A stretch of 64,000 bases of DNA from the NCBI RefSeq assembly GCF_006345805.1, contig NW_021836305.1, positions 1 through 64,000 of the forward strand. The letters run 5' to 3'. Shown here in pieces: positions 7,770 through 55,545 of this stretch; positions within the stretch are counted from its first letter, which is position 1, and every line of letters starts with the position of its first letter. The notes under the pieces are model-generated. The model was not told where the DNA came from. It saw only the letters and a list, made by a program, of their open reading frames with translations, and did not search any database. Source of the DNA: Octopus sinensis. Lineage: Eukaryota. Both the position numbers and the translations under genes were made by a program.

Positions 7770-7771
7770 TA

Positions 7772-32509: not shown

Positions 32510-34125
32510 ATTGTTGTCTTGAGAACAGGTTTATGTGTAACTCAGTCTCTCTCACACCGGACACTATATCTACTAGGAAATTTACACCAGCAATGCTACA
32601 ATGCCACCTTAAGAATGAACGCAACTATGCCTCTCCTGGTCTTGACAGTGTTACATACCTACTTCTCAAACGCGGTGGGTACTTTCTTCTAAACCAACTT
32701 TCACTATTCTTCCAATTCTGTCTTGACAATGATGTTACTCCAGAGCAGTGGAAAACTGCCAGTGTTATCCCTCTGTTCAAAAAGCGTGACCGCACATTGC
32801 CTGTCAACTATCGCCCCATTAGTCTTACTACCTGCATTGCCAAACTGATGGAATCCTATGTCAAGGAAACCCTCTGGAACTTCTGGAAGTCTCACAGCCT
32901 CATCCAGCCGTCACAATTTGGATTTATTCCTAACTCCAGCTGCTGTAATCAACTCATCGAGTTTCTTGAGGACATTACCCAAATCACTGATCGCGGATCC
33001 TGGGTGGATGTTGTTTACCTGGACTTTGCTAAGCCTTTTAACTCTGTGCCACACAAATGACTTATGGTGAAACTCTCTGCGTTGGGTGTAAGAGACGATC
33101 TCTATAACTGGTAGAAGTCCTTTATCGGCCAAAAAGAGGTTGTCACAGTTCTAGGACAGCACTCTTCACCCTATGAGATGACATCTGGTGTACCACAGGG
33201 ATCTGTTCTTGGCCCCCTTTTATTTGTTGCATATGTTAATGACATAGATGCCAACTTAAAGAATGCCACAGTGCTGAAATCTGCAGATGACATCAAGCTG
33301 TACCTCGAAATAAAGAGGTCAGATCCTGAACACTATAGATCTCTATTGCAATCAGACCTGGACACAATGCAGCAGTGGATCATGGACTGGCAACTCAAGC
33401 TGGCTGTGGACAAATGTACCACCATGCATTTTGGGAGGAAAAACCCAGCGTCTACTTACTCCCTTCACAACACTAATCTCAAAAAGTCTTCGTGTGAACG
33501 TGACCTGGGCGTTATTGTCGACAGCGATTTGCATTGGACAAAACACATTGCTAAAATTGCCAAGAAGGCTTGAGAGTGTCTTGGCATCACTCACCAAGTC
33601 CTTTGTGAGCCACTCTCCGGCTATCTATCAGTGGCTTTATATAGCTATGGTGCGACCTCACCTGGAATTTGCATCACCGGTCTGGAACCCCTATCTTGCC
33701 AAGGATATTTGCCATATTCTGAACGCCTTACTTCCCTGGGCATGGACACATTGAAACGCCGACGTCTGGCAGCTGACTTGGCAGACACCCATAACATTTT
33801 TAACCATCTTACAAACCATAACTCTGAGCACCTTTTCAAACTCCACCTGTTAAACACCCATGGACATGTTTACAAAGTCAGAAAACAGCACAGCTCCCAT
33901 GACTTTCGGAAACATTTTTTCATGCTAAGAGTTGCTGAAGCATGGAACAAACTGCCAGCATTAGTTGTTAGTTGTCAGAGCACTGCATCCTTCAAAACTT
34001 CCATGCTTCCTGAGATTCGCCAACACTACACCTGATTTTCTCCCCTCCATACACACGCAAGCATGTATCTGACTCATACACTGTTCGCTTTCCAGACATT
34101 TGTACATTACTGTATGTAATTGGTA
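32510..34125 (+). mobile_element. CR1-like LINE (RT domain to 3' UTR), pseudogenised
   Basis: ORF pieces 32533-33060 (NYRPISLT, VVYLDFAKPF), 33178-33573 (GVPQGSVLGPLLF, SADD) and 33631-34035; stops and frameshifts present. Confidence 0.93.
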
Positions 34126-34504
34126 TGCACAACAGAGAAAGCGGGTGAGTGGGAGGTAGGGTGTGTCTGATTTAAATATCAGGCTGACTGCATATTTTAC
34201 CTGTGTGTAGTTGGATATTATTTTGATGTTGAACGGATATTTTGTGTGTCCTCTGTAGAAAAAGAGGTAGGTAAAGATATCTTTTTGGTTGGGATGGTGG
34301 TGTTCATAGGGTTATGATACCCGGATGCTATTATATATATATATATATACACACACTTGTACATTTATGCAATATGTATGTATGCGTATGTCTATCCTTC
34401 TGTCTCTCAATATGTTCATACTGTTGCATGTTAGGCATGTATCTACATATATCTTTATATACATATATATATATATGTATGTATATATATAATATATATG
34501 TATA

Positions 34505-34538
<34 letters not shown>

Positions 34539-34564
34539 GTATGTATATATATAATATATATATA

Positions 34565-34701
34565 TATGTGACCATGTAGAAGCTCCATTTTTATTTTTAC
34601 ACATGTGTGTGTAATAGTTTGTCAGTATGCATGTATGCATGTATTTGTGTTGCTGTTTATGTGTGTGTGTCTGTGTGTGTGCATGTGTGTGAGTGTGTGA
34701 G

Positions 34702-34750
<49 letters not shown>

Positions 34751-34752
34751 AG

Positions 34753-34830
<78 letters not shown>

Positions 34831-34966
34831 CTCACCACACTCACACATGCACACACACAGACACACACACATAAACAGCAACACAAATACATGCATACAT
34901 GCATACTGACAAACTATTGCACACACATGTGTAAAAATAAAAATGGAGCTTCTACATGGTCACATA
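34565..34966. repeat. ~140-bp-arm palindrome around (TA)n, present only in duplication copy 1
   Basis: 34565-34708 is the reverse complement of 34824-34966; copy 2 (~51590-51742) has only the right arm. Confidence 0.85.
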
Positions 34967-36400
34967 ATGTGTTAAAAAATGCAGCCAAACCTCCCTCTAA
35001 CGTTGTCCTAGATACGTTATTCCTGAGAGCAACTCTTTCAATTACAGATCTAATCAATCAGTACTGACCTAGGGTTGTACAATAACAGATACGCTCAGAT
35101 ATGGGAGTAGATGGACCCTGAACAAAAGTACCCTATGATAGTGTTCTGCATGTTAAATACTTTTCCAGCCGTGTCTCTCACACAAGTGTAAAATAGAGAG
35201 TAAGAAAAACTTTGAATAAGTAAGATAATCACTCACTTTTTCTCTCTACCTAATGTCAAAGATATGTAGTACATTTCTGTTATAATCTGAGTCCAGACTA
35301 AAAATTTTCGGTTCATCTTTGGTGTTACAAGAAGTTTGTTGGTCTCTCGGTCAACTGTACCCCACAATAATCAAGAGAATTGCAGAGTTAGGTGATCAGA
35401 TGTTAGGGGTGACGTGGTTCCAGAAATTGTCCGACAGTGTGTGTATATGTTTGTGTGTCTGTGTTTGTCCCCCCAACATCACTTCACAACTGATGCTGGT
35501 GTGTTTAGGTCTCCGTAACTTAGCGGGTCAGCATAAGAGACCGATAGAATAAGTACTAGGCTTACAAAGAATAAGTCCTGGGGTCAATTGCTTGACTAAA
35601 GGCGGTGCTCCAGTATGGCCACAGTCAAATGACTGAAACAAGTAAAAGAGAGTAAAGAGTATACACACATATATACATAGATGGTTGTATGTGAGTGTGT
35701 GTCTGTGTGTCTTTGTGTTTGTTTCCCTCCTTGTTCAGCATAACAAGTGAGGCAATTTCTTTGACTAAACCCTTCAAGGCAGTGTCCAAGTAAGGCTGTT
35801 GTCCGATGACTGGAGCAAGTAACAAGTTAAAAAATACAAGATCCATCGATATAATTGCATTCTCTTTATTAGTGTCTTTAATTGCCAATCCATTATAATT
35901 TTTCAAACCAGTTATGCTGATGCTGATAGCATGTAAAAAGCATCCAGTCAACCTGTATACTCTGTAAAGTGGCTGGCATTAGGAAGGGCATCAAGCTGTG
36001 GAAACCAAACCAAAACAGACTATGAAAGCTGGTGTGGCCCCTGGCCTTGCAAGCTCCTGTCAAGCCGTCCAACCCATGCCAGCTTGGAAAATGGAATTCA
36101 AATGATGATGATGCTGATGATGCTGATGATGATGATGATGATGATGGTGATGATGATTCAGTCGTTTTGAAGTTTGACTTCATCTATCTTTATCAGTTTC
36201 ATCTCGAGAGCTACGGCCATGCTGGGGCACTGCCATTAATTCTTTGTTTTTGTATAGTATTATATGATAAATTCAAACCTTGTATTCCTATCCACTGATG
36301 AAAAATAGTTGCTTTTGTTTCTGACAAACTAGTAATCATTATTTACATTATTTACATTATTTACATTTGACGGATATTTGTCCTCATCTTGTTTGTTGTT

Positions 36401-36446
36401 AACACAACATTTCGGCTGATATACCCTCCAGCCTTCATCAGGTGTT
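36401..36446 (-). ncRNA. Minimal type-I hammerhead-ribozyme motif in a Penelope-like LTR fragment
   Basis: Minus strand AACAC-CTGATGA-A-GGCTG(10 nt)CAGCC-GAAA-T-GTT-GTGTT: stem I, core, stem II, GAAA, GUU triplet. Confidence 0.65.
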
Positions 36447-36720
36447 TTGGGGAAATGTCGACCCTGGGTTCTCATTCATAAGGGTTTTTTTGAAAGCTTA
36501 GTAAACTAGTAATCATTATTATTCTTTCCAAATTATTCTACAAGTTGTCATTTTCTACAAAGTTCTAAAGCCTTATCTTTAATTTCATTCTAATAAGATT
36601 GCCAAAAAGGTATTCACTTATTCTTTTATTCATTTAAACACACCAGCATCAGTTGTCAGCGATGTTGGGTGGGGTGGGGAAACAAAGACACACAAACATA
36701 TACACACACATACACACACA

Positions 36721-36806
<86 letters not shown>

Positions 36807-37191
36807 TACGGGGCTTCTCTCAGCTTCTGTCTACGAAATCCACTCACAAGGCTTTGGTTGGTCCAAGGCTATAGTAGAAGACACTTGCCCAAACTGCCAC
36901 GCAGTGGGACTGAACCCAGAACCATGTGGTTGGTAAGCAACCTACTTACCACACAGCCACTCCTACACCTCTGTGATAATATATTAGGAATGACAGATGT
37001 GTTGATTGGATTCTTGCTGTTCTGCTTGCACTCCATGAAGTATACTTAATTTTATTATATAAAATGATATGTTCCCTAAAATAAGGAATTCTTTCATCTG
37101 TATGTAGTAAGGAGGCCCTATTGGAGTGGGGGATAACCTCTTAATAGAGAATTTCAGGGAAAGTTGGTCAAAACAATCATCATCCTCATCA

Positions 37192-37222
<31 letters not shown>

Positions 37223-38038
37223 CTGTCTGTTTGCCATGTTGGTATGGGTTGGATGGCTTGATAGTAACTGGTAAGCCAAAGGGCTGCACCAGGTTCCGTA
37301 GCCTGTTTTGGCTTGAATTTTAAAACTGGATGCCCTTCATAATGTCAACCCAGCTTTTTATGTACTGGATGCTTTTCATGTAGCACCATCACCAATGTTT
37401 TTTTTTTAAGTGGCACCAGCACCCCAACCAATGCTTTTTACATGGCACCCTGGTTTTAGGATGGAAATTCTTAAACCTCATTTATGATATATAATGGACT
37501 TAACATCGAGAAACCTAAAGAGAGGAAGCATTACACATTTGTACAGCAAAACAATTGAAGAAGCTTTTTCAACTTTTAATATATGACTTGTAGTTCTTTC
37601 AAGGAGTATTTTTTGAAGCATCCTATGACTTTTCTTATATATACATTGTTACTTGATACTTTTGTATGTGTAGCAGATCAAAAGTGGAGAGGGATTACAG
37701 GTAATTAGATCGGGAGAGTAGCAGAATGTTTTGATTCCATAGACACAGTTTTCAGTGCATTAGGTACATAAACCACACACACGCATACACATGGTTGTTG
37801 TTAATAAAAAGAACAAGTAATTGAAGACCAGTGATGTGAAAAATCACTACAATTCAATGTGTGACCTGAAGAAAATTGACCTGCTATTTCTAGCAGACTA
37901 AGTAACCACACACAATCTATTTTCTTAGTGGAGGGAAATAAAAACATGTCACAGGAAAAATAGTGAAAGTATAATATTTTATGTTTATGTATTTGTTTTG
38001 CAAGACTCTTGATGGGAAATCATGTGTTGAAACAGATA

Positions 38039-38151
38039 CAAGATCTGATTAATAAGTATACGGACTGTTGCCATAGTAACGAAACTAAAGAGTAAAGATG
38101 TTTGGCAAAGATTGAGCTTGTACTCTGCTGTGCATGCACACTAAGTTTTAA
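38039..38151 (+). mobile_element. mariner 5' end truncated by the rDNA junction
   Basis: Identical to 54755-54867, where the element continues uninterrupted into transposase sequence. Confidence 0.7.
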
Positions 38152-41100
38152 ATCGAAAGCACGAAACTAATCGGGCGGTGTCGGCCACGTACGCGCGGAC
38201 CTAGCCGCGACCGATGCTGCGAGGTACAGGCGTTCGATACGGCGACGTGGTCCGTCTCGTAAATTCCCGAAAGATGACAAACTGCGGCCGGTGCCGGTAC
38301 CGGCGGGCCTGCGCCCGCGCCTTCGCCCGCGCCTCCGGCGCGCTACCGCGAGGCTGAATTGGGGGCTTCAGCGAAGCTTGCGCTCTCGCCCACGTACACG
38401 TGGACGTAGGCGCGATCGATGCCGTCAGTCGCCGGGAGTGCGTGGCGACATGCACCGGGTAAAAACAGCGACGCGGTCCGACCCGTGAGTTATGGAGGTG
38501 CTCGGACCGTAAGCAAACGGATCGGCCCCGGCTGGATAGTCACGCCTCTAGGTGACCGTCGCACCCCGAGGGGGTCAAGACTATATTGAGGGCTTGCAGT
38601 CGGCAGGTTTCATGCCTCGGGGACCGTTCGGCAGGACGCCAGAGACGTCAGCCTGCGACGCCGCCAGCCCGGCGGGCGGCCGCCGCCTTCGCGCCGCCTC
38701 GCTTTCTCCCGTTCGTCCGCGAGCCGCGGGGCCGTTAGCGGCAGGGCCGCGCCGGTCGCCCGTTCCTCCGCCGCGCTACCGTGCCCGAAACCGAAAGAAC
38801 GAACCCACGCTCGCGGTACGGCCCACGGACGCGTGGACGTAGCCGCCACCGATGTTGGAAGGGCGTTCACGAGATGCACGCCGTCGATACGGCGACGCGG
38901 TCCGTCCCGTAAAAACCCGAAAGATGGCAAACTGCGGCTAGCACGGTCGCCCGTTGCTCCGCCGCGCTACCGTGCCCGAAATCGAAAGAACGAACCCAAG
39001 CTCGCGTCATGGCCCACGTACGCGTGGACGTAGCCGCCAGCGATGCCGGAAGGCGTTCACGAGATGAACGCGCTCGATACGGCGACGCGGTCCGTCCCGT
39101 AAAATCCCGAAAGATGACGAAAACTGCGGCTAGCGCGATGTAGCGGCAGGCCTGCGCAAGGCCTGCGCCGGTCGCCCGCGTCTCCGCCGCCGAACCGTGC
39201 GTGGAATCGAAAGCACGAAACTAAGCGGGCGGTGTCGGCCACGTACGCGTGGACCTAGCCGCGACCGATGTTGCGAGGTACGGGCGTTCGATACGGCGAC
39301 GTGGTCCGTCTCGTAAATTCCCGAAAGATGACAAACTGCGGCCGGAGCCGGTAGCGGCGGGCCTTCGCCCGCGCCTTCGCCCGCGCCTTCGCCCGCGCCT
39401 CCGCCCGCGCCTCCGCCCGCGCCTCCGCCGCGCTACCGCGAGGCCGAAGCGGAGCTTGAGCGAAGCTGGCGCTCTCGCCCACGTACACGTGGAGGTAGGC
39501 GCGATCGATGCCGTCAGTCGCCGGGAGTGCGTGGCGATATGCACCGGGTAAAAACAGCGACGTGGTCCGACCCGTGAGTTCAGGAGGTGCTCGGACCGTA
39601 AGCAAACGGATCGGCCCCGGCTGGATAGTCACGCCTCTAGGTGACCGTCGCACCCCAAGGGGGTCAAGACTATATTGAGGGCTTGCAGTCGGCAGGTTTC
39701 ATGCCTCGGGGACCGTTCGGCAGGACGCCAGAGACGTCAGCCTGCGATGCCGTCAGCCCGGCGGGCGGCCGCCGCCTTCGCGCCGCCTCGCTTTCTCCCG
39801 TTCGTCCGCGAGCCGCGGGGCCGTTAGCGGCAGGCCCGCGCCGGTCGCCCGTTCCTCCGCCGCGCGACCGTGCCCGAAACCGAAAGAACGAACCCACGCT
39901 CGCGGTACGGCCCACGGACGCGTGGACGTAGCCGCCACCGATGTTGGAAGGGCGTTCACGAGATGCACGCCGTCGATACGGCGACGCGGTCCGTCCCGTA
40001 AAAACCCGAAAGATGGCAAACTGCGGCTAGCACGGTCGCCCGTTGCTCCGCCGCCCTAGCGTGCCCGAAATCGAAAGAACGAACTTGAGCGTGCGGTCTC
40101 GCCCACGTACGCGTGGACGTAGCCGCGACCGATGCCGGAAGGCGTTCACGAGATGCACGCCGTCGATACGGCGACGTGCTGCGTCCCGTGAAAACACGAA
40201 AGATGGCAAAACTGCGTCTAGCATGGTCGCCCGTTGCTCCGCCGCCCAGACGTGACCGAAATCGAAAGAACGAACCTAAGCTCGCGGTGCGACCCCCGTA
40301 CGCGTGGACGTAGCCGCCACCGGTGCCGGAAGGCGTTCACGAGATACCGGCGCTCGATAGGAGTACGTGGTCCGTCCCGTAATAATCCCGAAAGATGACG
40401 AACTGCGGCTAGCACGAGGTAGCGGCGGAAGGCGTGCTCCGGTCGCCCGCGTCTCCGCCGCCCTACCGTGCGTGAAATCGAAAGCACGAACTTGAGCGTG
40501 CGGTCTCGCCCGCGTACGCGTGGACGTAGCCGCGACCGATGTCGCGACGTGCGGGCGTTCGATGCGGCGACGCGGTCCGTCCCGTAAATTTCCGAAAGAT
40601 GACAAAGTGCGGCCGGTGCAGGCAACGGCCGATTGCGGCGGGCATGCGCCGCCTTCTACCGCCTTCGCCCGCAGCTCCGCCGCGCTACCGCGACGCTCTA
40701 GTGGGACTTGAGCGAAACTCGCGCTCTCGCCCGCGTACACGTGGACGTAGGCGCGATCGATGCCGTCAGTCGCCGGGAGTGCGTGGCGATATGCACCGGG
40801 TAAAGACAGCGACGTGGTCCGACCCGTGAGTTAAGGAGGTGCTCGGACCGTAAGCAAACGGATCGGCCCCGGCTGGATAGCCACGCCTCTAGGTGACCGT
40901 CGCACCCCAAGGGGGTCAAGACTATATTGAGGGCTTGCAGTCGGCAGGTTTCATGCCTCGGGGACCGTTCGGCAGGACGCCAGAGACGTCAGCCCGCGAC
41001 GCCGTCAGCCCGGCGGGCGGCCGCCGCCTTCGCGCCGCCTCGCTTTCTCCCGTTCGTCCGCGAGCCGCGGGGCCGTTAGCGGCAGGGCCGCGCCGGTCGC

Positions 41101-41870
41101 CCGTTCCTCCGCCGCGCGACCGTGCCCGAAACCGAAAGAACGAACCCACGCTCGCGGTACGGCCCACGGACGCTTGGACGTAGCCGCCACCGATGCCGGA
41201 AGGCGTTCACGAGATGCACGCCGTCGATACGGCGACGCGGTCCGTCCCGTAAAAACACGAAAGATGGCAAACTGCGGCAAGCACGGTCGCCCGTTGCTCC
41301 ACCGCCCTGACGTGCCCGAAATCGAAAGAACGAAGCTAAGCTCGCGGTGCGACCCCCGAACGCGTGGACGTAGCCGCCACCGATGCCGGAAGGCGTTCAC
41401 GAGATGCACGCCGTCGATACGGCGACGTGGTGCGTCCCGTGAAAACACGAAAGATGGCAAACTGCGGCTAGCACGGTCGCCCGTTGCTCCGACGTGCGGG
41501 CGTTCGATGCGGCGACGCGGTCCGTCCCGTAAATTCTCGAAAGATGACAAAGTGAGGCCGGTGCAGGCAACGGCCGATTGCGGCGGGCATTCGCCCGCTT
41601 TCTACCGCCTTCGCCCGCAGCTCCGCCGCGCTACCGCGAGGCTCGATTGGGACTTGAGCGAAACTCGCGCTCTCGCCCGCGTACACGTGGATGTAGGCGC
41701 GATCGATGCCGTCAGTCGCCGGGAGTGCGTGGCGATATGCACCGGGTAAAAACAGCGACGTGGTCCGACCCGTGAACAAGGAGGTGCTCGGACCGTAAGC
41801 AAACGGATCGGCCCCGGCTGGATAGTCACGCCTCTAGGTGACCGTCGCACCCCAAGGGGGTCCAGACTAA
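38151..41870 (+). repeat. rDNA intergenic spacer: ~190-bp subrepeats arranged in ~0.95-1.25-kb units each ending in a promoter-like block
   Basis: GAAA(T/C)CGAAAG anchors at 38787, 38978, 39204, 39876, 40067, 40258, 40474, 41128 and 41318; CCTCTAGGTGACCGTCGCACCCC at 38545, 39634, 40886 and 41831; GC/CpG rich and directly upstream of ETS-18S. Confidence 0.85.
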
Positions 41871-41885
41871 TATGTAGGGTTGTGG
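41700..41885 (+). promoter_or_regulatory. Putative RNA polymerase I gene promoter; candidate start near TATGTAGGG (41871-41879)
   Basis: Last copy of the repeated ~170-bp block; homology to the spacer copies stops at GACTA(A)TAT...AGGG, which resembles TATA(R)GG-type Pol I start sites of plants and insects. Confidence 0.55.
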
Positions 41886-45662: not shown

Positions 45663-46837
45663 GCGCCGTGTTCTCGAATTAGAGAAGAAGAAGAAGGAAA
45701 TAAACATTCGCGATCCGCCCGATAAGTCGCGGCCGGGCCCCCTCGCCCGAGTACCACCGAATGCTCTTGATTCGGCCCTCTAACAGCGCAGCAGTAGCGG
45801 TCGCGCGGCAGCCCGCCGTCACACGCCGCGACTCTCTGCTGCCGACCGCGCAACCACCCTGCCGGCGTCGGCCCGCCCTCATGGCGCTCGGACGACGGGG
45901 CTTGCACGCTTTGCGAGCTCCATGACCGTTTCTCTCTTCCTTCCTGCCTCGCCGACCGCGCGATTCGGCCTAGGCCGTGGGCGCCGCCCGGCGCCTTCCG
46001 ATGACCACCGTAACGCGCGGCCGTCTTTTTTATTTCCTCGCCTCCTAGCGCGCAGTCTCTTTTCGGAGACTTGCCGAGCCAAAAGTCGCGGCCGGGCCCC
46101 CTCGCCCGAGTACCACCGAATGCTCTTGATTCGGCCCTCTAACAGCGCAGCAGTAGCAGTCGCGGCAGCCCGCCGTCGCACGCCGCGACTCTCTGCTGCC
46201 GACCGCGCAACCACCCTGCCGGCGTCGGCCCGCCCTCATGGCGCTCGGACGACGGGGCTTGCACGCTTTGCGAGCTCCATGACCATTTCTCTCTTCCTTC
46301 CTACCTCGCCGACCGCGCGATTCGGCCTAGGCCGTGGGCGCCGCCCGGCGCCTTCCGATGACCACCGTAACGCGCGGCCGTCTTTTTTTTTTTCCTCGCC
46401 TCCTAGCGCGCAGTCTCTTTTCGGAGACTTGCCGAGCCAAAAGTCGCGGCCGGGCCCCCTCGCCCGAGTACCACCGAATGCTCTTGATTCGGCCCTCTAA
46501 CAGCGCAGCAGTAGCCGTCGCCGCAGCCCGCCGTCACACGCCGCGACTCTCTGCTGCCGACCGCGCAGCCACCCTGCCGGCGTCGGCCCGCCCTCATGGC
46601 GCTCGGACGACGGGGCTTGCACGCTTTGCGAGCTCCATGACCATTTCTCTCTTCCTTCCTGCCTCGCCGTCGGCGTCGGCAGTGGCGCGCTTCGTTCCGC
46701 TGTCGACGCCTTCGAATCTCATTTTATTTTTTTTCCGTCGCGCGGCGCCGGCCTCCTGTCGGGGGCCGCTGCCGCTTTCCTTTTTTTTTTTTTTCCTTTC
46801 CGTACGTCTAGCGCGTAGTAGTAGCAAATATTACCGA
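45663..46837 (+). other. ITS1 containing ~2.6 tandem copies of a 359-bp unit
   Basis: Units start AAGTCGCGGCCGGG at 45724, 46083 and 46441. Confidence 0.85.
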
Positions 46838-47000
46838 AACCCTGGACGGGGGATCACTCGGCTCGTCCGTCGATGAAGAGCGCGGCTATCCGCGTGAACT
46901 GATGCGAATTGCAGGACTCAGTGAACATCGACACCTCGAACGCACATTGCGGCCCCGGGATCCTATCGTCCCGGGGCCCCGTCCGGTCGAGAGGCGGTCA
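46838..47000 (+). rRNA. 5.8S rRNA
   Basis: GGATCACTCGGCTCG, GATGAAGAGCGC, GAATTGCAGGAC and CGAACGCACATTGCGGCCCCGGG conserved blocks. Confidence 0.93.
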
Positions 47001-47455
47001 AGACACGAAAACGCAGTCCGCCGCGGCCGTTGGCTGCGGCGGGGAGTCGGGAGTCGCAGGAAAGGGCGGCGCTCGCCGCGAGGCCCGCAAGTTATCTCGC
47101 GCGCGAGCCGCCGCCGCTCGATCGTCCGTCTCCCGTAATGCCAGACCGTCATCGTTGCGAAGCGCTGTTGCGGAGGAGGGAGCCCGCCGAAGTGCGGAAG
47201 CAGTGGAGTAAGGGATCAGTAGCAGGAACGACACGGCGAGGCCCCTCGTCGCGTCCGCGTCTTCCTCTGCGTTCCTCTCCGAGCGACCGCCGCCCTCCGT
47301 CGCTGCCGCCGCAGCCGCCGCCGTCTCGTCTTTCGGCGTTCGCTCTGTGGGAATATCTCTTTCGTGCGAGCGTTCGTGCCGATCTACAGCGGTGGTGTGC
47401 GCGCCGTAGTAGCAAGCAGCAGCCGTCTCATTTGCAGCGTCTCCTTTTTTTCACG
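47001..47455 (+). other. ITS2
   Basis: GC-rich spacer between 5.8S and the 28S 5' conserved block. Confidence 0.8.
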
Positions 47456-50340
47456 CTGCCCTCGACTCGGACGCGATTACCCGCCGAACTTAAGCATATC
47501 GCTAAGCGGAGGAAAAGAAACCAACCGGGATTCCCTAAGTAACGGCGAGTGAACCGGGAGAAGCCCAACGCCGAATCTCGTCGGCCGCGCCGGTCGTCGA
47601 GAGCTGTGGCGCAAGGGTCGTACACGGTCGATCGTTTCGCCCGGCTAGGTTCGGAGTCCCCTCGATCGGGGCTGCCCAGAGCGGGTGCCAGGCCCATTGG
47701 GAGCCGGCGGCGATCGGCGGTGTTCATCGGCCCGAGAGTCGGGTTGCTTGGGAACGCAGCCCAAAGCGGGTGGTAAGCTCCATCCAAGGTTAAATACGGG
47801 GACGAGTCCGATAGCCGACAAGTACCGCGAGGGAAAGTTGAAAAGAACTTTGGAGAGAGAGTTCAAGAGACCGTGAAACCGCCCAGGGGTAAACGGGTAG
47901 GACCGCTCACCGCGATCGCGAGGGGACTCAGTCCGCTGCTTCACGCCGAGGCGCCGTCGTCGTCGACGAACGCGCCGGTGGCGGGCGGTCGTCTGCCGCC
48001 TCGTCGGCGTTCGATTCCCGGGGCGCCGGCATCGGACGCACTTCCCCTCCGATCCGTCGTCGCGACCCGTCTCCCGTCGGGCCGGTAGGCGCGCGGCGTC
48101 CGCAGGTCGCAGACGAGAGCCCCGTCGCCGCCGCGCAAGCGGCGGTCGGTGGGATCCACGCGCTCTTCTCGACCGGGCCCGTCGCTCCACGTAAAGCGCA
48201 GGCACGGCTAACCGACGGAGACGGGCAAACGCACCTCGCCCTTAGCACGAACGACGCAGCGAGTCGCGCGCGGCCTCTTCGCGGAGGTCGCGAGCGACGC
48301 GGCCGCCCGCGCGCCGCGACTGCGCGGAAACCCTCGCAAGGGGGGCGACGCGCGTTGCGGTCGCGGGACACCTTCCGCCCGAAAAGCCGCCCGCTGCCGC
48401 CGGTCAGCGACGAGCATCGGCAACCTACCCGACCCGTCTTGAAACACGGACCGAGGAGTCCCAGTCGACTGCGAGTCGTTGGAGCCTTTCACTTCGCGAA
48501 CTCCGACGGCACAGCGAAAGCGAGAACGTGACACGACGTCGCCGTCTCGCTTCTGGCGGGACGGCGCTTCGAAGCATCGTTCCCGGGTCGGGTCCGCGCG
48601 TTCGCCGCGACGTTCGCGTCCGGCGTTCCCGCTCCGACTCAGGTGTAGCAGGCGGCCGGGGACCCGAAAGATGGCGATCCACGCCCGGTCATAACGAAGC
48701 CAGAGGAAACTCTGGTGGAAGTCCGAAGCGCCTCTGACGTGCAAATCGATCGTCAGAACCGGGTGTAGGGGCGAAAGACCAATCGAGCCGTCTAGTAGCT
48801 GGTTCTCTCCGAAGTTTCCCTCAGGATAGCTGGCGCCAGCGGGAGAACGACACGCAATTCCGTCCGGTAAAGCGAACGACTGGAGGCTCCGGGGACGTTG
48901 ACGGCCTCGATCTACTCTCGAACTCGGAACGGGCGAAACGGGCCGCTCCTCTCCCGATCGGAGGCGGCCGCCGTTATGCGACGACGAATGCACGGTGCCA
49001 AGTGGGCCACTTTTGGTAAGCAGAACTGTGATGTGGGATGAACCGAACGTCCGGCTAAGGTGCCCTACGCTTCGCCCATTAGATCCCCGAAAGGGTGTCG
49101 GTCGATATAGACAGCAGGACGGTGGCCACGGAAGTCGGAATCCGCTCAGGAGTGTGTAACAACTTACCTGCCGAATCGACCGGCCCCGAAAATGGATGGC
49201 GCTGGAGCGAGCGACCGATGCCGGACCGGCCGGGCGACAGGTTGCGCGATCGCCGGCGAGGCGACTTTCCGATGCCCGGTCGAGTAGGAGGGCGCCGCGG
49301 CGTGCATGGAAGCCGCGGGCGCGAGCCCGGGTGAAGCCGACCGCGGGTGCAGATCTCGGTGGTAGTAGCAAATATTCGAACGAGACCTTCGAAGACCGAA
49401 GTGGAGAAGGGTTCCGTGCCAACGGCGGTCGAGCACGGGTCAGTCGGTCCTAAGAAGCGGGCGAAAGCTTCCACGAAAGGCGCCGGATCCGTCGTTTAGA
49501 AAGAAGAAAAGAACTGCTCTCGCGCGGTTCTTCGATATCGATTTACGCGGCCGGCCTCGCATCGAAAGGGAATCGGGTTAATATTCCCGAACCCGAACTC
49601 GGAGAGTGCCCGTCCGTCGGCGGGAACGCGGCGTGCTCTTCCTAGCAGCGCGTCCGTCGTCGAAGCCGGCGGCCGGGCGAAGCAGCGGCAACGCAAGCGA
49701 GCCCGGAGACGTTGCCGGGAGCCCCGGGAAGAGTTCTCTCTTCTTCGTAAAGGACCGCGTCCGTGGAATCGGCTCGTCCGGAGATACGGATATGGTACCT
49801 GTAGAGCGCCGCGTCTCGGGCGGCGTCCGGTGCGCTCTCGGCGGCCCTGGAAAATCCGGGTCCGTAACGAATCGCAGCTCTCGAGTCGGTCCGTACCCAC
49901 CATCCGCAGCAGGTCTCCAAGGTGTACAGCCTCTCGTCGATAGCGCCAATGTAGGTAAGGGAAGTCGGCAAAATGGATCCGTACCTTCGGAAGAAGGATT
50001 GGCTCCGAGGACCGGGTCGGTCGGGCCGTGTGTGTCGCCTCGCTCCCGCGCGGCCGCGTCGCCGTTCGCTCGGCGTCGCGCCGCCGGGCGCCGGAACACG
50101 TCTTCACGCGAAGCGGCGGACCGGTACGGGGCTGTAGCGTTGGCGTCGGACTCGGCATCCGGTGCGCCCCATTTTTCCGGCGGTCGTCGCAGCGTCGCAG
50201 CGTCGGCGGGCAACCCGCCACGCGCCGGTGCGCGGTCGCGCCTTCGGTCAACGCGGGTCGGCTTCTACGCGCGCGTTCTTTCCTTCCGCTGCGCTGCGTT
50301 CCGTCGCGTGCCGCCGCCTACGGACCTCCCGGTCCGAAAA
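47456..50340 (+). rRNA. 28S rRNA, 5' part only, truncated at the end of expansion segment D8
   Basis: ACCCGCCGAACTTAAGCATAT, GACCCGTCTTGAAACACGGACC, GACCCGAAAGATGG and GTAGGTAAGGGAAGTCGGC; the A-rich D7a (hidden-break region) is at ~49455-49570; sequence switches abruptly to CR1 at 50339-50341, so the peptidyl-transferase domain is absent. Confidence 0.95.
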
Positions 50341-51120
50341 GCTGGCTGTGGACAAATGTACCACCATGCATTTTGGGAGGAAAAACCCAGCGTCTACTTA
50401 CTCCCTTCACAACACTAATCTCAAAAAGTCTTCGTGTGAACGTGACCTGGGCGTTATTGTCGACAGCGATTTGCATTGGACAAAACACATTGCTAAAATT
50501 GCCAAGACGGCTTGAGAGTGTCTTGGCATCACTCACCAAGTCCTTTGTGAGCCACTCTCCGGCTATCTATTAGTGGCTTTATATAGCTATGGTACAACCT
50601 CACCTGGAATTTGCATCACCGGTCTGGAACCCCTATCTTGCCAAGGATATTAATCGTCTGGAAGCCGTTCAGCGACGTGCAACCAAGAGAATACCCTCCA
50701 TCAGGCATTTGCCATATTCTGAACGCCTTACTTCCCTGGGCATGGACACATTGAAACACCGACGTCTGGCAGCTGACTTGGCAGACACCCATAACATTTT
50801 TAACCATCTTACAAACCATAACTCTGAGCACCTTTTCAAACTCCACCTGTTAAACACCCATGGACATGTTTACAAAGTCAGAAAACAGCACAGCTCCCAT
50901 GACTTTCGGAAACATTTTTTCATGCTAAGAGTTGCTGAAGCATGGAACAAACTGCCAGCATCAGTTGTTAGTTGTCAGAGCACTGCATCCTTCAAAACTT
51001 CCATGCTTCCTGAGATTCGCCAACACTACACCTGATTTTCTCCCCTCCATACACACGCAAGCATGTATCTGACTCATACACTGTTCGCTTTCCAGACATT
51101 TGTACATTACTGTATGTAAT
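50339..51120 (+). mobile_element. CR1-like LINE 3' part, 5'-truncated at the rDNA junction
   Basis: ORF 50589-51035 PHLEFASPVWNPYLAKDINRLEAVQRRATK...; duplicate of 33397-34125. Confidence 0.92.
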
Positions 51121-51485
51121 TGATATGCACAACAGAGAAAGCGGGTGAGTGGGAGGTAGGGTGTGTCTGATTTAAATATCAGGCTGACTGCATATTTTAC
51201 CTGTGTGTAGTTGGATATTATTTTGATGTTGAACGGATATTTTGTGTGTCCTCTGTAGAAAAAGAGGTAAGTAAAGATATCTTTTTGGTTGGGATGGTGG
51301 TGTTCATAGGGTTATGATACCCGGATGCTATTATATATATATATACATATATACACACACTTGTACATTTATGCAATATGTATGTATGCGTATGTCTATC
51401 CTTCTGTCTCTCAATATGTTCATACTGTTGCATGTTAGGCATGTATCTACATATATCTTTATATACATATATATATATATGTATG

Positions 51486-51531
<46 letters not shown>

Positions 51532-51542
51532 ATATATATATA

Positions 51543-51579
<37 letters not shown>

Positions 51580-53160
51580 ATATATATATATATATATAAA
51601 ATACTCACACACACTCACACACATGCACACACACAGACACACACACATAAACAGCAACACAAATACATGCATACATGCATAGTGACAAACTATTACACAC
51701 ACATGTGTAGAAATAAAAATGGAGCTTCTACATGGTCACATAATGTGTTAAAAAATGCAGCCAAACCTCCCTCTAACGTTGTCCTAGATACGTTATTCCT
51801 GAGAGCAACTCTTTCAATTACAGATCTAATCAATCAGTACTGACCTAGGGTTGTACAATAACAGATACGCTCAGATATGGGAGTAGATGGACCCTGAACA
51901 AAAGTACCCTATGATAGTGTTCTGCATGTTAAATACTTTTCCAGCCGTGTCTCACACAAGTGTAAAATAGAGAGTAAGAAAAACTTTGAATAAGTAAGAT
52001 AATCACTCACTTTTTCTCTCTACCTAATGTCAAAGATATGTAGTACATTTCTGTTATAATCTGAGTCCAGACTAAAAATTTTCGGTTCATCTTTGGTGTT
52101 ACAAGAAGTTTTGTTGGTCTCTCGGTCAACTGTACCCCACACAATAATCAAGAGAATTGCAGAGTTAGGTGATCAGATGTTAGGGGTGACGTGGTTCCAG
52201 AAATTGTCCGACAGTGTGTGTATATGTTTGTGTGTCTGTGTTTGTCCCCCCAACATCACTTCACAACTGATGCTGGTGTGTTTAGGTCTCCGTAACTTAG
52301 CGGGTCAGCATAAGAGACCGATAGAATAAGTACTAGGCTTACAAAGAATAAGTCCTGGGGTCAACTTGCTTGACTAAAGGCGGTGCTCCAGTATGGCCAC
52401 AGTCAAATGACTGAAACAAGTAAAAGAGAGTAAAGAGTATATACACATATATACATAGATGGTTGTATGTGAGTGTGTGTCTGTGTGTCTTTGTGTTTGT
52501 TTACCTCCTTGTTCAGCATAACAAGTGAGGCAATTTCTTTGACTAAACCCTTCAAGGCAGTGTCCAAGTAAGGCTGTTGTCCGATGACTGGAGCAAGTAA
52601 CAAGTTAAAAAATACAAGATCCATCGATATAATTGCATTCTCTTTATTAGTGTCTTTAATTGCCAATCCATTATAATTTTTCAAACCAGTTATGCTGATG
52701 CTGATAGCATGTAAAAAGCATCCAGTCAACCTGTATACTCTGTAAAGTGGCTGGCATTAGGAAGGGCATCAAGCTGTGGAAACCAAACCAAAACAGACTA
52801 TGAAAGCTGGTGTGGCCCCTGGCCTTGCAAGCTCCTGTCAAGCCGTCCAACCCATGCCAGCTTGGAAAATGGAATTCAAATGATGATGATGCTGATGATG
52901 ATGATGATGATGATGGTGATGATGATTCAGTCGTTTTGAAGTTTGACTTCATCTATCTTTATCAGTTTCATCTCGAGAGCTACGGCCATGCTGGGGCACT
53001 GCCATTAATTCTTTGTTTTTGTATAGTATTATATGATAAATTCAAACCTTGTATTCCTATCCACTGATGAAAAATAACTGCTTTTGTTTCTAACGAACTA
53101 GTAATCATTATTTACATTATTTACATTTGATGGATATTTGTCCTCATCTTGTTTGTTGTT

Positions 53161-53206
53161 AACACAACATTTCGGCTGATATACCCTCCAGCCTTCATCA
53201 GGTGTT
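53161..53206 (-). ncRNA. Hammerhead motif, duplicate of 36401-36446
   Basis: Identical sequence within duplication copy 2. Confidence 0.65.
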
Positions 53207-54754
53207 TTGGGGAAATGTCGACCCTGGGTTCTCATTCATAAGGGTTTTTTTGAAAGCTTAGTAAACTAGTAATCATTATTATTCTTTCCAAATTATTCTA
53301 CAAGTTGTCATTTTCTACAAAGTTCTAAAGCCTTATCTTTAATTTCATTCTAATAAGATTGCCAAAAAGGTATTCACTTATTCTTTTATTCATTTAAACA
53401 CACCAGCATCAGTTGTCAAGCGATGTTGGGTGGGGTGGGGAAACAAAGACACACAAACATATACACACACATACACACACACCTATATATATATATATAA
53501 TATATATATATATATACATATATACGATGGGCTTCTCTCAGCTTCTGTCTACGAAATCCACTCACAAGGCTTTGGTTGGTCCAAGGCTATAGTAGAAGAC
53601 ACTTGCCCAAACTGCCACGCAGTGGGACTGAACCCAGAACCATGTGGTTGGTAAGCAACCTACGTACCACACAGCCACTCCTACACCTCTGTGATAATAT
53701 ATTAGGAATGACAAGATGTGTTGATTGGATTCTTGCTGTTCTGCTTGCACTCCATGAAGTATACTTAATTTTATTATATAAAATGATATGTTCCCTAAAA
53801 TAAGGAATTCTTTCATCTGTATGTAGTAAGGAGGCCCTATTGGAGTGGGGGATAACCTCTTAATAGAGAATTTCAGGGAAAGTTGGTCAAAACAATCATC
53901 ATCCTCATCACCATCATCATCATCATCATCATCATCAACTGTCTGTTTGCCATGTTGGTATGGGTTGGATGGCTTGATAGTAACTGGTAAGCCAAAGGGC
54001 TGCACCAGGTTCCGTAGCCTGTTTTGGCTTGAATTTTAAAACTGGATGCCCTTCATAATGTCAACCCAGCTTTTTATGTACTGGATGCTTTTCATGTAGC
54101 ACCATCACCAATGTTTTTTTTTAAGTGGCACCAGCACCCCAACCAATGCTTTTTACATGGCACCCTGGTTTTAGGATGGAAATTCTTAAACCTCATTTAT
54201 GATATATAATGGACTTAACATCGTGAAACCTAAAGAGAGGAAGCATTACACATTTGTACAGCAAAACAATTGAAGAAGCTTTTTCAACTTTTAATATATG
54301 ACTTGTAGTTCTTTCAAGGAGTATTTTTTGAAGCTTTCCTATGACTTTTCTTATATATGACATTGTTACTTGATACTTTTGTATGTGTAGCAGATCAAAA
54401 GTGGAGAGGGATTACAGGTAATTAGATCGGAGGAGCAGAATGTTTTGATACCATAGACACAGTTTTCAGTGCATTAGGTACATAAACCCACACACACGCA
54501 TACACATGGTTGTTGTTAATAAAAAGAACAAGCAATTGAAGACCAGTGATGTGAAAAATCACTACAATTTCAATGTGTGACCTGAAGAAAATTGACCTGC
54601 TATTTCTAGCAGACTAAGTAACCACACACAATCTATTTCTTAAGTGGAGGGAAATAAAAACATGTCACAGGAAAAATAGTGAAAGTATAATATTTTATGT
54701 TTATGTATTTGTTTTGCAAGACTCTTGATGGGAAATCATGTGTTGAAACAGATA

Positions 54755-55545
54755 CAAGATCTGATTAATAAGTATACGGACTGTTGCCATAGTAACGAAA
54801 CTAAAGAGTAAAGATGTTTGGCAAAGATTGAGCTTGTACTCTGCTGTGCATGCACACTAAGTTTTAATGTTCTAGCTCACTTCCACTGTTTATAGCAGTG
54901 CTTGGAAGGAAGGTGTGTAGTGTATGATTTGTTGCATAGACTTGCTCAGAGGCCTTTACAAGGTTGCAGAAAGTGTATGGAAAGGAGTGTATGAGCTACA
55001 CACAAGTGTACGAGTGGTTCAGACATTTCCAAGATGGTCAGTAAAACGTCAATATTGACGAACGTTCTGGGAGACCAGCAACCAGCAGAACTGAGAAAAA
55101 CATCACAGATGTGCATGCAGCTGTGAGGGGAAATTGTCAAATCACCATCTGTGAGTTATCAGAGGACGTGCACATTAGTTACGGTTCAGTTCAGTTCATT
55201 TGCACTGAAGATTTGGGTATGAGACACATGTCTGCCAAGTTTGTGCCAAAAACTGCTTTCAACTGATCCAAAACACATTCAGGTTTCAGTTGCACAAGAT
55301 CTTGATTGTGTCGAGAACGGTGAAAACTTTTTGTAAACTTTGCATAGGCCTCTGAGCATGTATCGTCAAGCTTTTGGCAGAATTTCATGCAGATTCTCGG
55401 CTAAACTTTCTCTGTCATGGTCAATCCGACGATCACACACTATACACATTTTTTCCAAGCACTGCTGTAAACAGTGGAAGTGAGTTAGAATGTTACAACT
55501 TCGTGCAGATACACAACAAGGTTCAAGGTCAATCTGTGCATTTGT
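54755..55545 (+). mobile_element. mariner derivative with inverted duplication of its 5' region (foldback)
   Basis: TA-CAAGATCTGATTAATAAGTA start; internal VYEWFRHF...DERSGRP...MSAKFVPK transposase N-terminus; ~55315-55545 is an inverted copy of the 5' segment (minus ORF MKFCQKLDDTCSEAY). Confidence 0.75.

What the first reader, a model, noticed from the sequence alone, without database searches (positions are those of the whole stretch)
33397..54867. Orphan 45S rDNA unit inserted between two transporter genes with a ~4.6-kb target duplication
Seen: host segment A (33397-38151), then 12.2 kb of rDNA from mid-IGS to 28S D8, then A again (50339-54867), with no gap. The CR1 LINE runs intact across the left edge of copy 1 but starts abruptly in copy 2. 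The mariner 5' end is cut off in copy 1 but continues after copy 2. Deleting one A plus the rDNA therefore restores both elements. Inference: a DNA-level event (replication template switching out to rDNA and back 4.7 kb upstream, or integration of an A+rDNA circle), not ordinary retrotransposition, whose TSDs are only ~2-20 bp. The insert is still CpG-rich, suggesting it is young.
Basis: partly seen in the sequence, partly recalled or inferred. Interest (0 to 1): 0.8.

Follow-up and report, generated by a model that had tools for sequence, protein, structure and literature searches.

The report
Decayed rDNA fragment flanked by duplication
An octopus genome carries a broken, mutated 12-kb copy of its ribosomal RNA gene unit between two amino-acid transporter genes, bracketed by two copies of 4.6 kb of host DNA. 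This is a clear but ordinary example of a stray rDNA pseudogene left by a copy-and-paste DNA repair accident, and it is not a young or working gene.

Summary
A1 (33397-38151) and A2 (50339-54867) are direct repeats, 0.77% diverged. They bracket 12,187 bp of rDNA running from the IGS subrepeats to about nt 2,902 of a 4,907-nt 28S. There is no gap.

The organism is Octopus sinensis. The flanking genes are tandem SLC7A9-like transporters.

A LINE reverse-transcriptase domain crosses A1's left edge and is cut in A2. A 719-bp mariner-like element with 108-nt inverted ends is whole after A2, but A1 keeps only its first 47 nt.

O. vulgaris has 9.9 kb between the same anchors. That fits one A and no rDNA.

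The new result is that the insert is a decayed pseudogene. I compared it with rDNA contigs from six independent sequencing runs. Against these:
- the 18S lacks 412 bp of core sequence;
- the coding parts differ by 0.3-0.9%, with changes at invariant sites;
- changes are GC>AT biased and deletions dominate.

This decay matches the A1/A2 divergence, so a single event likely made both. The junctions carry 4 bp (AAGC) and 1-2 bp of microhomology.

Best reading (about 0.7): a real germline "cycle of templated insertion", meaning a template switch or end-joining event that used rDNA as filler. It happened after the split from O. vulgaris. "Young" is not supported. An assembly artefact (about 0.15) cannot be excluded without reads. 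Known kind; modest interest.

The parts
2679..17022 (+). Last six coding exons of the left SLC7A9-like (b(0,+)-type amino acid transporter) gene. Exons at 2679-2807, 5376-5480, 8419-8517, 12623-12793, 15975-16151 and 16936-17022.
   Evidence: tblastn of O. sinensis and O. vulgaris proteins P0001, P0002, P0003 and P0008.
32440..34115 (+). CR1-like LINE remnant. The RT domain spans 32440-33570 and homology to other copies ends at 34115. It runs unbroken across the left edge of A1 at 33397.
   Evidence: Pfam RVT_1 on two ORF pieces. Alignment to the copy at 1726-2543 continues 51 bp upstream of 33397.
33397..38151 (+). Host segment A, copy 1 (4,755 bp). It carries copy-specific derived changes: a 58-bp deletion inside the LINE, about 10-16 unique substitutions and 9 unique deletions in the 2.8 kb that can be polarised. 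It ends 47 nt into the left inverted end of the mariner-like element.
38152..41823 (+). rDNA intergenic spacer. It holds about 190-bp subrepeats within about 1.1-1.3-kb higher-order repeats. The insert starts inside a subrepeat. Paralogous subrepeats read ...G(G/A)A|ATCGAAAG, which gives 1-2 bp of microhomology with the host ...TTTTAA.
41824..43435 (+). Promoter-proximal spacer and 5' ETS. Colinear with reference rDNA contigs L006 and L007. 32 substitutions (2.1%) and 13 indels.
43436..45662 (+). 18S rRNA pseudogene. It has a 412-bp internal deletion at 44763|44764 that removes conserved core, plus 6 substitutions and four 1-2-bp deletions. The reference 18S is 2,645 nt.
   Evidence: Rfam 884 bits here against 1,339 bits for L006. 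Alignment.
45663..46837 (+). ITS1, containing a 358-bp tandem repeat (2.6 copies, 45724-46669).
46838..46996 (+). 5.8S rRNA, identical to the reference.
46997..47456 (+). ITS2. 9 substitutions and 5 deletions against the reference.
47457..50338 (+). 5' 59% of the 28S (about nt 1-2,902 of 4,907). It is truncated in the expansion segment after Rfam column 1888 (D8/ES27 by position). It has 17-27 substitutions, including C>T at 47790 and 48806 and a 1-nt G deletion at 49027/49028, all in invariant core, plus 8 indels.
50339..54867 (+). Host segment A, copy 2 (4,529 bp). It begins abruptly inside the LINE RT domain. The first 4 nt (AAGC... read as AGC plus the preceding A) are shared with the 28S donor, giving AAGC microhomology. 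It is nearly identical to the same segment in assembly GCA_006345805.1 (L003).
54821..55539 (+). Internally deleted mariner-like element, 719 bp, with 108-nt inverted ends at 54821-54928 and 55432-55539. It spans the right edge of A2 intact.
   Evidence: Inverted repeat. Colinearity with L002 and L003. The transposase-like motif was read. Pfam gave no support.
61524..63509 (+). Exons 1 (61524-61607) and 2 (63399-63509) of the right SLC7A9-like gene. It is the ortholog of the O. vulgaris P0003 gene and the allele of the L003 gene.

Best explanation
This is a real germline rearrangement in the Octopus sinensis lineage. It arose after the split from O. vulgaris.

Inferred mechanism: a broken or stalled DNA end at host position 38151, inside a mariner-like element, was extended on, or joined to, an rDNA template. 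Entry was in an IGS subrepeat through 1-2 bp of microhomology. About 12.7 kb of rDNA were copied or captured: spacer repeats, promoter, ETS, 18S, ITS1, 5.8S, ITS2 and the first 59% of the 28S. The strand then returned to the home locus through a 4-bp microhomology (AAGC), landing 4.75 kb behind the departure point, inside a LINE.

Segment A was therefore replicated twice and now flanks the rDNA. In the vocabulary used for cancer genomes, this is a one-template 'cycle of templated insertion'. It is equivalent to a FoSTeS/MMBIR-type tandem duplication with filler DNA.

Cut off from the rDNA array's homogenisation, the copy then decayed as a neutral pseudogene. It is an rDNA orphon and does nothing.

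Shown: the structure, the empty ancestral arrangement, the microhomologies, the decay, and the matching divergence of insert and duplication.

Inferred: that the event was replicative rather than end-joining of a free rDNA fragment or homologous integration of an A+rDNA circle, and that the assembly is correct.
For: 1. Structure. Direct repeats bracket co-oriented rDNA of less than one unit, with no gap.

2. Ancestral state. The LINE RT domain crosses A1's left edge. The TIR-bounded element crosses A2's right edge.

3. Empty site in the sister species. In O. vulgaris OX597830.1 the anchors that match window 26553 and 35307/52081 lie 9,890 bp apart. The window distance is 8,754 bp through A1 and 25,528 bp through A2.

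4. The reference rDNA is homogeneous. 28S contigs from four runs are 100% identical over 3-5 kb. Two ETS-18S contigs from two further runs have no mismatches between them.

5. The window copy differs from that reference along its whole comparable length:
- 18S: 412-bp deletion, 6 substitutions and 4 small deletions.
- ETS: 2.1% substitutions.
- 28S: 0.6-0.9% substitutions, including invariant sites.
- Direction: GC>AT 47 of 78 substitutions.
- Indels: 21 deletions against 7 insertions.
. This is not what a collapsed array consensus, or a random functional unit picked up by a chimeric read, would look like.

6. Clock agreement. One-lineage divergence of the rRNA-coding parts is 0.44-0.63%. Two-lineage divergence of A1 and A2 is 0.765%, or about 0.38% per lineage. 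Both are about a quarter of the O. sinensis-O. vulgaris divergence at this locus, which is 80 of about 2,744 sites, or 2.9%.

7. Microhomology. The return junction shares 4 bp: reference 28S ...GGAAAGC|GCGC against host ...CTCAAGC|TGGC. The exit junction shares 1-2 bp. This is typical of in-vivo template switching or alt-EJ.

8. [quoted passage not shown]
Against: - I had no reads. Both junctions rest on a single assembly, and I could not identify which assembly the window comes from.
- The A1/A2 divergence (0.77%) is within the allelic range for this group. O. vulgaris heterozygosity is reported as 1.22%, so A1 and A2 could be two haplotypes.
- A1 has an unusually high ratio of indels to substitutions: 12 indels against 16 substitutions. 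On the O. vulgaris branch the figures are 7 against 80. An unpolished false copy could look like this.
- In the older assembly GCA_006345805.1, the scaffold ends only 7.4 kb upstream of the point matching window 51526. Something at this locus defeated that assembly, and I could not read what.
- 9.3 kb of the O. vulgaris intergenic region was never seen. Its emptiness is inferred from length alone.
- The species of the SRR91056xx runs is not stated by the tool. 'Same or sister species' is inferred from about 98% identity in the ETS and ITS.
- The donor unit may already have been a diverged variant. That would weaken the clock argument.
Confidence: 0.7

Rival explanations
1. Assembly artefact. 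A is single-copy. A1 and A2 are the two haplotypes of one heterozygous animal, and the assembler strung them in tandem through an rDNA contig or chimeric reads. This would be a false haplotypic duplication.
For: - The A1/A2 divergence of 0.77% is below the 1.22% heterozygosity reported for the sister species.
- A1 carries eight unique 1-bp deletions in 2.8 kb. A2 agrees with both L003 and O. vulgaris at those sites, as expected if one copy escaped polishing.
- rDNA is abundant and often takes part in chimeras.
- The older assembly breaks close to this site.
Against: - It needs two independent false joins within the same 4.75 kb. Both must be to rDNA, co-oriented, and together give a colinear stretch of less than one unit.
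- The rDNA is a decayed copy along its whole comparable length. Contigs from six runs show the real array to be uniform, so a consensus or random array unit would match the reference.
- Most of the insert's differences are substitutions with GC>AT bias, plus a 412-bp deletion. This is not long-read noise.
- The 4-bp microhomology at the 28S|A2 junction is not expected from in-vitro ligation chimeras.
- The decay of the insert matches the A1/A2 divergence. Under this rival that would be a coincidence.
- There is no gap or run of N.
Confidence: 0.15
2. Edge of a real rDNA array. In O. sinensis a whole nucleolus-organiser array sits between A1 and A2. The window shows only its two degenerate boundary units, which the assembler merged into one apparent partial unit.
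For: - Units at array boundaries escape homogenisation and decay (general knowledge).
- A chromosome-scale scaffold of the older assembly terminates about 6 kb into where this rDNA should lie. This is expected if an unassemblable array follows.
- The window holds less than one unit, which is what a maximal collapse would give.
Against: - Decay is spread evenly over ETS, 18S, ITS2 and 28S, with no visible seam.
- No second copy of any rDNA part is present in the window.
- The sister species has no rDNA here, so an array would have had to move recently.
- A 12-kb rDNA-like stretch is enough by itself to break a noisy long-read assembly.
Confidence: 0.08
3. RNA-mediated origin. The LINE's reverse transcriptase copied a read-through transcript of the LINE plus 3.7 kb of downstream flank, then jumped onto pre-rRNA. 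This would make a chimeric retrocopy (28S joined to a 5'-truncated LINE) inserted next to its source.
For: - The 28S and the 5'-truncated LINE are joined head-to-tail in the same sense orientation. That is the geometry of known RT template-switch chimeras such as U6-L1 (general knowledge).
- There is microhomology at that junction.
Against: - The insert contains 3.7 kb of spacer subrepeats upstream of the promoter, plus unprocessed ETS, ITS1 and ITS2. This is not rRNA or normal pre-rRNA.
- It would need more than 17 kb of continuous reverse transcription.
- There is no poly(A) or LINE 3' tail at the 3' end of the copy, which ends inside a transposon's inverted end.
- There is no short target-site duplication.
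Confidence: 0.02

Closest known systems
rDNA orphons, or dispersed rDNA pseudogenes (term from Childs et al. 1981, from my own knowledge; human examples in PMC5381670)
   Same: A stretch colinear with the rDNA unit, including both transcribed region and IGS. It lies outside the array among ordinary genes, has escaped concerted evolution and is degraded.
   Different: This copy is only mildly degraded (0.3-2%). Both insertion junctions are preserved at base resolution, as are a flanking 4.6-kb duplication and an empty site in the sister species. The mode of origin can therefore be read. The host is a cephalopod.
Cycle of templated insertion (PCAWG classification, PMC7025897) and FoSTeS/MMBIR duplication-insertion rearrangements (germline examples in PMC5120786, listed but not read)
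   Same: A copy of a distant template is inserted, and the string returns to the host chromosome behind its departure point. A host segment is therefore re-replicated in direct orientation on both sides. There are two junctions with 1-4 bp of microhomology.
   Different: Those events are somatic (tumours) or de novo pathogenic in humans. This one is a germline event persisting in a wild invertebrate, with rDNA as the template, and old enough to have decayed. Whether it was replicative or an end-joining capture cannot be told from the sequence.
False haplotypic duplications in long-read assemblies (general knowledge)
   Same: Two adjacent near-identical copies that differ at about the level of heterozygosity.
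   Different: False duplications normally abut a gap or contig end, or sit directly in tandem. Here the copies are separated by 12.2 kb of a specifically decayed rDNA copy, with microhomology junctions and no gap.
NUMT-like filler-DNA capture at double-strand breaks (general knowledge)
   Same: Abundant non-chromosomal or repetitive DNA used as a patch during break repair, with little or no junction homology.
   Different: Simple capture does not duplicate kilobases of the target. The 4.75-kb duplication needs staggered breaks on sister chromatids, a template switch, or integration of a circle.

Membership tests
rDNA orphon / dispersed rDNA pseudogene | The sequence derives from, and is colinear with, the nuclear rDNA unit. 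| tested here: met
   Rfam finds SSU, 5.8S and LSU in order on one strand. The copy is colinear with independent rDNA contigs L006-L011 over 41824-45750 and 46640-50342.
rDNA orphon / dispersed rDNA pseudogene | It lies outside the tandem array, with non-rDNA sequence on both sides. | tested here: met
   Both junctions to host DNA lie in the window at 38151|38152 and 50338|50339, between two SLC7A9-like genes. This holds if the assembly is right.
rDNA orphon / dispersed rDNA pseudogene | It has escaped concerted evolution and diverged from the homogeneous array. | tested here: met
   Reference contigs agree across runs: four 28S contigs are 100% identical and two ETS-18S contigs have no mismatches. 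The window copy has the 412-bp deletion in the 18S, about 78 substitutions and 28 indels.
rDNA orphon / dispersed rDNA pseudogene | It is a single or partial unit, not an array. | tested here: inconclusive
   The window holds 12.2 kb, less than one unit, and no part is repeated. A collapsed array between two decayed edge units cannot be excluded without reads.
Cycle of templated insertion / MMBIR-FoSTeS duplication with insertion | A host segment is re-replicated in direct orientation on both sides of the insert. | tested here: met
   A1 and A2 are direct repeats of 4.5-4.75 kb.
Cycle of templated insertion / MMBIR-FoSTeS duplication with insertion | The insert is a copy of a template that still exists elsewhere. 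| tested here: met
   Intact rDNA with a full 18S (2,645 nt) and 28S (4,907 nt) is present in six sequencing runs.
Cycle of templated insertion / MMBIR-FoSTeS duplication with insertion | The junctions show short microhomology and no long homology. | tested here: met
   AAGC (4 bp) at the return junction. A or AA (1-2 bp) at the exit junction, inferred from paralogous IGS subrepeats.
Cycle of templated insertion / MMBIR-FoSTeS duplication with insertion | The ancestral locus had one copy of the host segment and no insert. | tested here: met
   Both transposons are restored by removing one A plus the rDNA. The O. vulgaris spacing of 9.9 kb fits one A. 9.3 kb of that interval was not read.
Cycle of templated insertion / MMBIR-FoSTeS duplication with insertion | It was made by replicative template switching rather than by ligation of fragments. 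| not testable with these tools
   The final sequence is the same for a template switch, for sister-chromatid end-joining with filler, and for homologous integration of an A+rDNA circle.
LINE-mediated retrotransposition / RT chimeric retrocopy | An RNA-derived insert with a 3' tail and a short (about 2-20 bp) target-site duplication. | tested here: not met
   The insert includes non-transcribed spacer repeats, ETS and ITS. There is no tail, and the duplication is 4.6 kb.
False haplotypic duplication (assembly artefact) | The copies differ at the allelic level. | tested here: met
   0.765%, against 1.22% heterozygosity in the sister species.
False haplotypic duplication (assembly artefact) | The copies abut a gap or contig end, or sit directly in tandem. 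Depth over each copy is half that of the flanks. | tested here: inconclusive
   There is no N in the window, and the copies are separated by a decayed rDNA copy with microhomology junctions. That argues against the artefact. Read depth could not be tested.

The most novel reading that the evidence does not exclude
The 12.2 kb may be only the two decayed edges of a nucleolus-organiser array that was seeded at this site in O. sinensis after its split from O. vulgaris. The event that left the 4.75-kb flanking duplication would then record, at base resolution, how an rDNA locus moves to a new chromosomal position.
Probability: 0.07. Interest if true: 0.6.

Novelty: new member of a known kind. Interest (0 to 1): 0.3.

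Why it matters
- Most stray rDNA copies are too degraded for their origin to be read. This one keeps both junctions, the donor sequence, the empty site in a sister species, and an internal clock in which the insert's decay matches the duplication's divergence. It is a clean natural example of a germline duplication with a long templated insertion.
- It is a practical warning for annotation. The locus scores as full-length 18S, 5.8S and partial 28S in Rfam, yet it is a dead copy. It should not be counted as an rRNA gene or used as a phylogenetic marker.
- It shows that CpG richness is not a reliable age indicator for rDNA-derived inserts in this genome.
- It does not change how rDNA or repair is understood.

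Tried and rejected
- Collapsed functional array or pristine young copy. Rejected once same-species references were found. The low Rfam 18S score (884 bits) turned out to be a 412-bp deletion and not lineage oddity.
- Exact-product look-ups that found nothing: the 404-aa and 251-aa antisense 28S ORFs and the A2 LINE ORF. The 131-aa ORF did work.
- Junction-spanning ORFs were not searched. In k=31 graph assemblies of short reads, the 169 bp shared by A1 and A2 after the junction forces a contig break there, so a negative result would mean nothing.
- Pfam on the 'mariner' pieces gave nothing, even at E<=10. The element is defined by its 108-nt inverted ends instead.
- I checked whether the window is simply part of GCA_006345805.1. 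It is not identical to either locus fetched from that assembly: L003 differs by 0.24% on the right side and 0.83% on the left, and L004 is about 98% identical. The window's own assembly remains unidentified.
- The 9.3 kb between O. vulgaris loci L001 and L002, and the last 7.4 kb of scaffold CM016875.1, could not be fetched. No gene is called there, and flanks are capped at 10 kb.
- A literature search for the SRR91056xx runs and for octopus rDNA mapping gave nothing usable.
- The RT-chimera idea was considered because of the 28S to 5'-truncated-LINE geometry. It was rejected on the content of the insert.

Full report
**What is in the window**

Self-comparison shows two direct copies of a host segment: A1 (33397-38151) and A2 (50339-54867). 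They differ by 42 substitutions and 21 indels. Outside simple repeats and gap neighbourhoods the difference is 26/3,400 = 0.765%.

Between the copies lie 12,187 bp at 65% G+C. Rfam reads them as 18S (43436-45662), 5.8S (46838-46996) and the 5' part of the 28S (from 47457), all on the + strand. They are preceded by IGS subrepeats (38152-41882) and a 5' ETS.

**Organism and neighbourhood**

The exons on the left (2679-17022) and on the right (61524-61607 and 63399-63509) encode b(0,+)-type (SLC7A9-like) amino-acid transporters. They are 99-100% identical to Octopus sinensis proteins and 97% identical to O. vulgaris proteins.

These genes form a tandem array in both species, with a period of about 67-73 kb. 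The paralogs show mosaic identity, from 0.1% to 3% per kb, which suggests gene conversion. The right-hand gene is the allele of the gene in locus L003 (GCA_006345805.1), with 30 substitutions in 12.5 kb. It is the ortholog of the O. vulgaris P0003 gene (L002).

**The two edges of A cut transposons**

- Left edge: a LINE reverse-transcriptase domain (Pfam RVT_1) runs across 33397. Another copy of the same LINE family, at 1726-2543, stays aligned for 51 bp upstream of 33397 in A1. In A2 that upstream sequence is 28S.
- Right edge: a 719-bp element (54821-55539) has 108-nt inverted ends and a transposase remnant that resembles mariner by motif. Pfam does not confirm the mariner label. The break at 54867|54868 lies 47 nt into the left end, and A1 retains only those 47 nt.
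- Both L003 and O. vulgaris L002 run colinear across this point.

**Empty site in the sister species**

In O. vulgaris OX597830.1, the end of L001 matches window 26553 and L002 position 618 matches window 35307 (A1) or 52081 (A2). These anchors lie 9,890 bp apart in O. vulgaris. In the window they are 8,754 bp apart through A1 and 25,528 bp apart through A2. O. vulgaris therefore has room for one A and no rDNA. The middle 9.3 kb of that interval could not be fetched, so this is a length argument.

**The insert is a decayed pseudogene (main new result)**

I used spurious ORFs inside the rDNA as handles to recover independent rDNA contigs from Logan assemblies of six runs:

| Loci | Runs | Coverage |
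|---|---|---|
| L006, L007 | SRR9105617, SRR9105615 | ETS to start of ITS1 |
| L008-L011 | SRR9105621, 24, 20, 31 | ITS1 to end of 28S |

The four 28S contigs are 100% identical to each other over 3-5 kb. The two ETS-18S contigs have no mismatches between them. They give an 18S of 2,645 nt (1,339 Rfam bits) and a 28S of 4,907 nt (2,189 bits).

Against these references the window copy shows the following:

| Region | Substitutions | Indels |
|---|---|---|
| 18S | 6 | 412-bp deletion at 44763\|44764, plus four 1-2-bp deletions |
| 5' ETS | 32 (2.1%) | 13 |
| 5.8S | 0 | 0 |
| ITS2 | 9 | 5 deletions |
| 28S | 17-27 | 8 |

- The 412-bp deletion removes universally conserved core sequence. It explains the low 884-bit score of the window's 18S.
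- The 28S changes include C>T at 47790 (GGCTAAATAC) and at 48806 (GGTTCCCTCC), and loss of a G at 49027/49028. All three lie in invariant core. The Rfam alignments and a related octopod 28S (L005) confirm this.
- Overall, 47 of 78 substitutions are GC>AT, and deletions outnumber insertions 21 to 7.

This is the signature of a copy evolving without constraint in an AT-rich genome. It is not a collapsed consensus of the array, and not a typical functional unit carried in by a chimeric read.

**Age**

CpG o/e of the insert is 1.43. The reference rDNA is at 1.43-1.47, and the flanking host DNA is at 0.33-0.44 on the left side and in A1 and A2, and 0.72 to the right of A2. Substitutions are not enriched at CpG: 20 of 78 (26%) fall there, against 30% of bases. 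CpG richness therefore says nothing about age here.

The rRNA-coding parts, where the array itself is essentially frozen, have diverged 0.44-0.63% on one lineage. A1 and A2 differ by 0.765% across two lineages. A four-way alignment with L003 and O. vulgaris gives:
- 80 differences unique to O. vulgaris (2.9% of about 2,744 sites);
- 16 unique to A1;
- 6 derived states shared by A2 and L003;
- 1 unique to A2.

The insert and the duplication are therefore about equally old, roughly a quarter of the species divergence. This fits a single event and an empty site in O. vulgaris.

**Junctions**

- Return junction: the reference 28S reads ...GGTCCGGAAAGC|GCGCGC and the host reads ...GGCAACTCAAGC|TGGCTG. 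The join therefore shares AAGC (4 bp).
- Exit junction: the host ...AAGTTTTAA meets ATCGAAAGCACG. Paralogous IGS subrepeats show that motif preceded by GA or AA, giving 1-2 bp of microhomology.
- The 28S breakpoint is at about nt 2,902 of 4,907, in the expansion after Rfam column 1888. That assignment is my inference.

**Mechanism**

The architecture is a host segment re-replicated on both sides of a copy of a distant template, with two microhomology junctions. PCAWG defines exactly this as a 'cycle' of templated insertion (PMC7025897). Germline studies ascribe it to FoSTeS/MMBIR (general knowledge; PMC5120786 was listed but not read).

I commit to this class of event: a 3' end lost at 38151 was extended on rDNA for about 12.7 kb and returned 4.75 kb upstream.

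Two other routes give the same final sequence and cannot be separated from it here. One is end-joining between staggered sister-chromatid breaks with an rDNA fragment as filler. The other is homologous integration of an A+rDNA circle.

An RT-mediated chimera was considered because of the sense-to-sense 28S to truncated-LINE join. It was rejected because the insert carries spacer repeats, ETS and ITS, and has no tail or short TSD.

**Could it be an artefact?**

Arguments for an artefact:
- The A1/A2 divergence lies within octopus heterozygosity (1.22% in O. vulgaris).
- A1 has an odd excess of 1-bp deletions.
- The older assembly's scaffold ends 7.4 kb upstream of the point matching window 51526.

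Arguments against:
- It would need two co-oriented false joins to rDNA within 4.75 kb.
- The insert is decayed along its whole comparable length, while the real array is uniform.
- The junction carries 4 bp of microhomology.
- The insert's decay agrees with the duplication's divergence.

My estimates are:

| Reading | Probability |
|---|---|
| Real orphan | about 0.7 |
| Artefact | about 0.15 |
| Decayed edges of a real array merged by the assembler | about 0.08 |
| Other | remainder |

Only reads can settle this.

**Comparison and verdict**

Dispersed, degraded, near-full-length rDNA copies are known, for example in human (PMC5381670). The classical term is 'orphon'. Duplication-plus-templated-insertion events are also known.

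This is a well-preserved new member of both categories, in a cephalopod. The DNA-level interpretation is supported, and 'young' is not. Interest is modest.

Noticed in passing
L006 1626-4270; L008 702-5608 (minus strand): The functional octopus rRNAs are very long and GC-rich: 18S is 2,645 nt and 28S is 4,907 nt, at 64% G+C and CpG o/e of about 1.45. Normally invariant stretches are rewritten (for example GGCTCAGGAACCGGACC where most eukaryotes have GGCTCATTAAATCAGTT). Generic Rfam scores are low even for the intact genes.
   Followed up: partly
window 1-27016 and 51526-64000; L001-L004: The SLC7A9-like transporter genes form a tandem array with a period of about 67-73 kb in both O. sinensis and O. 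vulgaris. The 3' halves and downstream regions of neighbouring paralogs are far more alike (down to 0.1% per kb) than the 5' halves, in a mosaic pattern that suggests gene conversion. A further paralog (L004, protein P0001) lies at 43.4 Mb on the same O. sinensis scaffold.
   Followed up: partly
L003 (CM016875.1:59284358-59349064, reversed): In assembly GCA_006345805.1 the chromosome-scale scaffold ends only 7.4 kb upstream of the base matching window 51526. If the structure is the same there, that end lies about 6 kb inside this rDNA. The window matches none of the loci I could fetch from that assembly exactly.
   Followed up: no
window 45724-46669: ITS1 contains a 358-bp tandem repeat (2.6 copies, 97% matches).
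   Followed up: no
window 41874-42085 vs 42301-42473: The sequence around the putative promoter and start of the ETS recurs about 430 bp downstream at about 77-79% identity. This looks like a duplicated promoter-like block inside the ETS, and it is also present in the reference contigs.
   Followed up: no
window 34565-34966 (A1) vs 51486-51742 (A2): A (TA)n/(TG)n-rich block forms a near-perfect 400-bp palindrome in A1 (95.6% self-complementary). A2 lacks 219 bp of it. This is the largest length difference between the two copies.
   Followed up: no
window 33706|33707 vs 50649-50706: A1 has a 58-bp deletion inside the LINE, relative to A2 and to the LINE copy at 1726-2543. A1 is the more derived copy.
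   Followed up: yes
window 13328-13738 and 14483-14858: Two minisatellite arrays with short periods (about 8-18 bp offsets, 90-95% identity) lie in an intron of the left transporter gene.
   Followed up: no
window 21411-22221 (minus strand); 24588-25316: A Tc1-like transposase remnant (Pfam HTH_Tnp_Tc3_2 and DDE_3) and a separate zf-RVT ORF lie in the intergenic region downstream of the left gene.
   Followed up: no
L005 (ENA ERZ23499442, scaffold_5710): A metagenome assembly contains a 3.7-kb octopod rDNA contig, about 95% identical in the 28S and unalignable in the ITS. It presumably comes from host or prey DNA of another octopod species.
   Followed up: no
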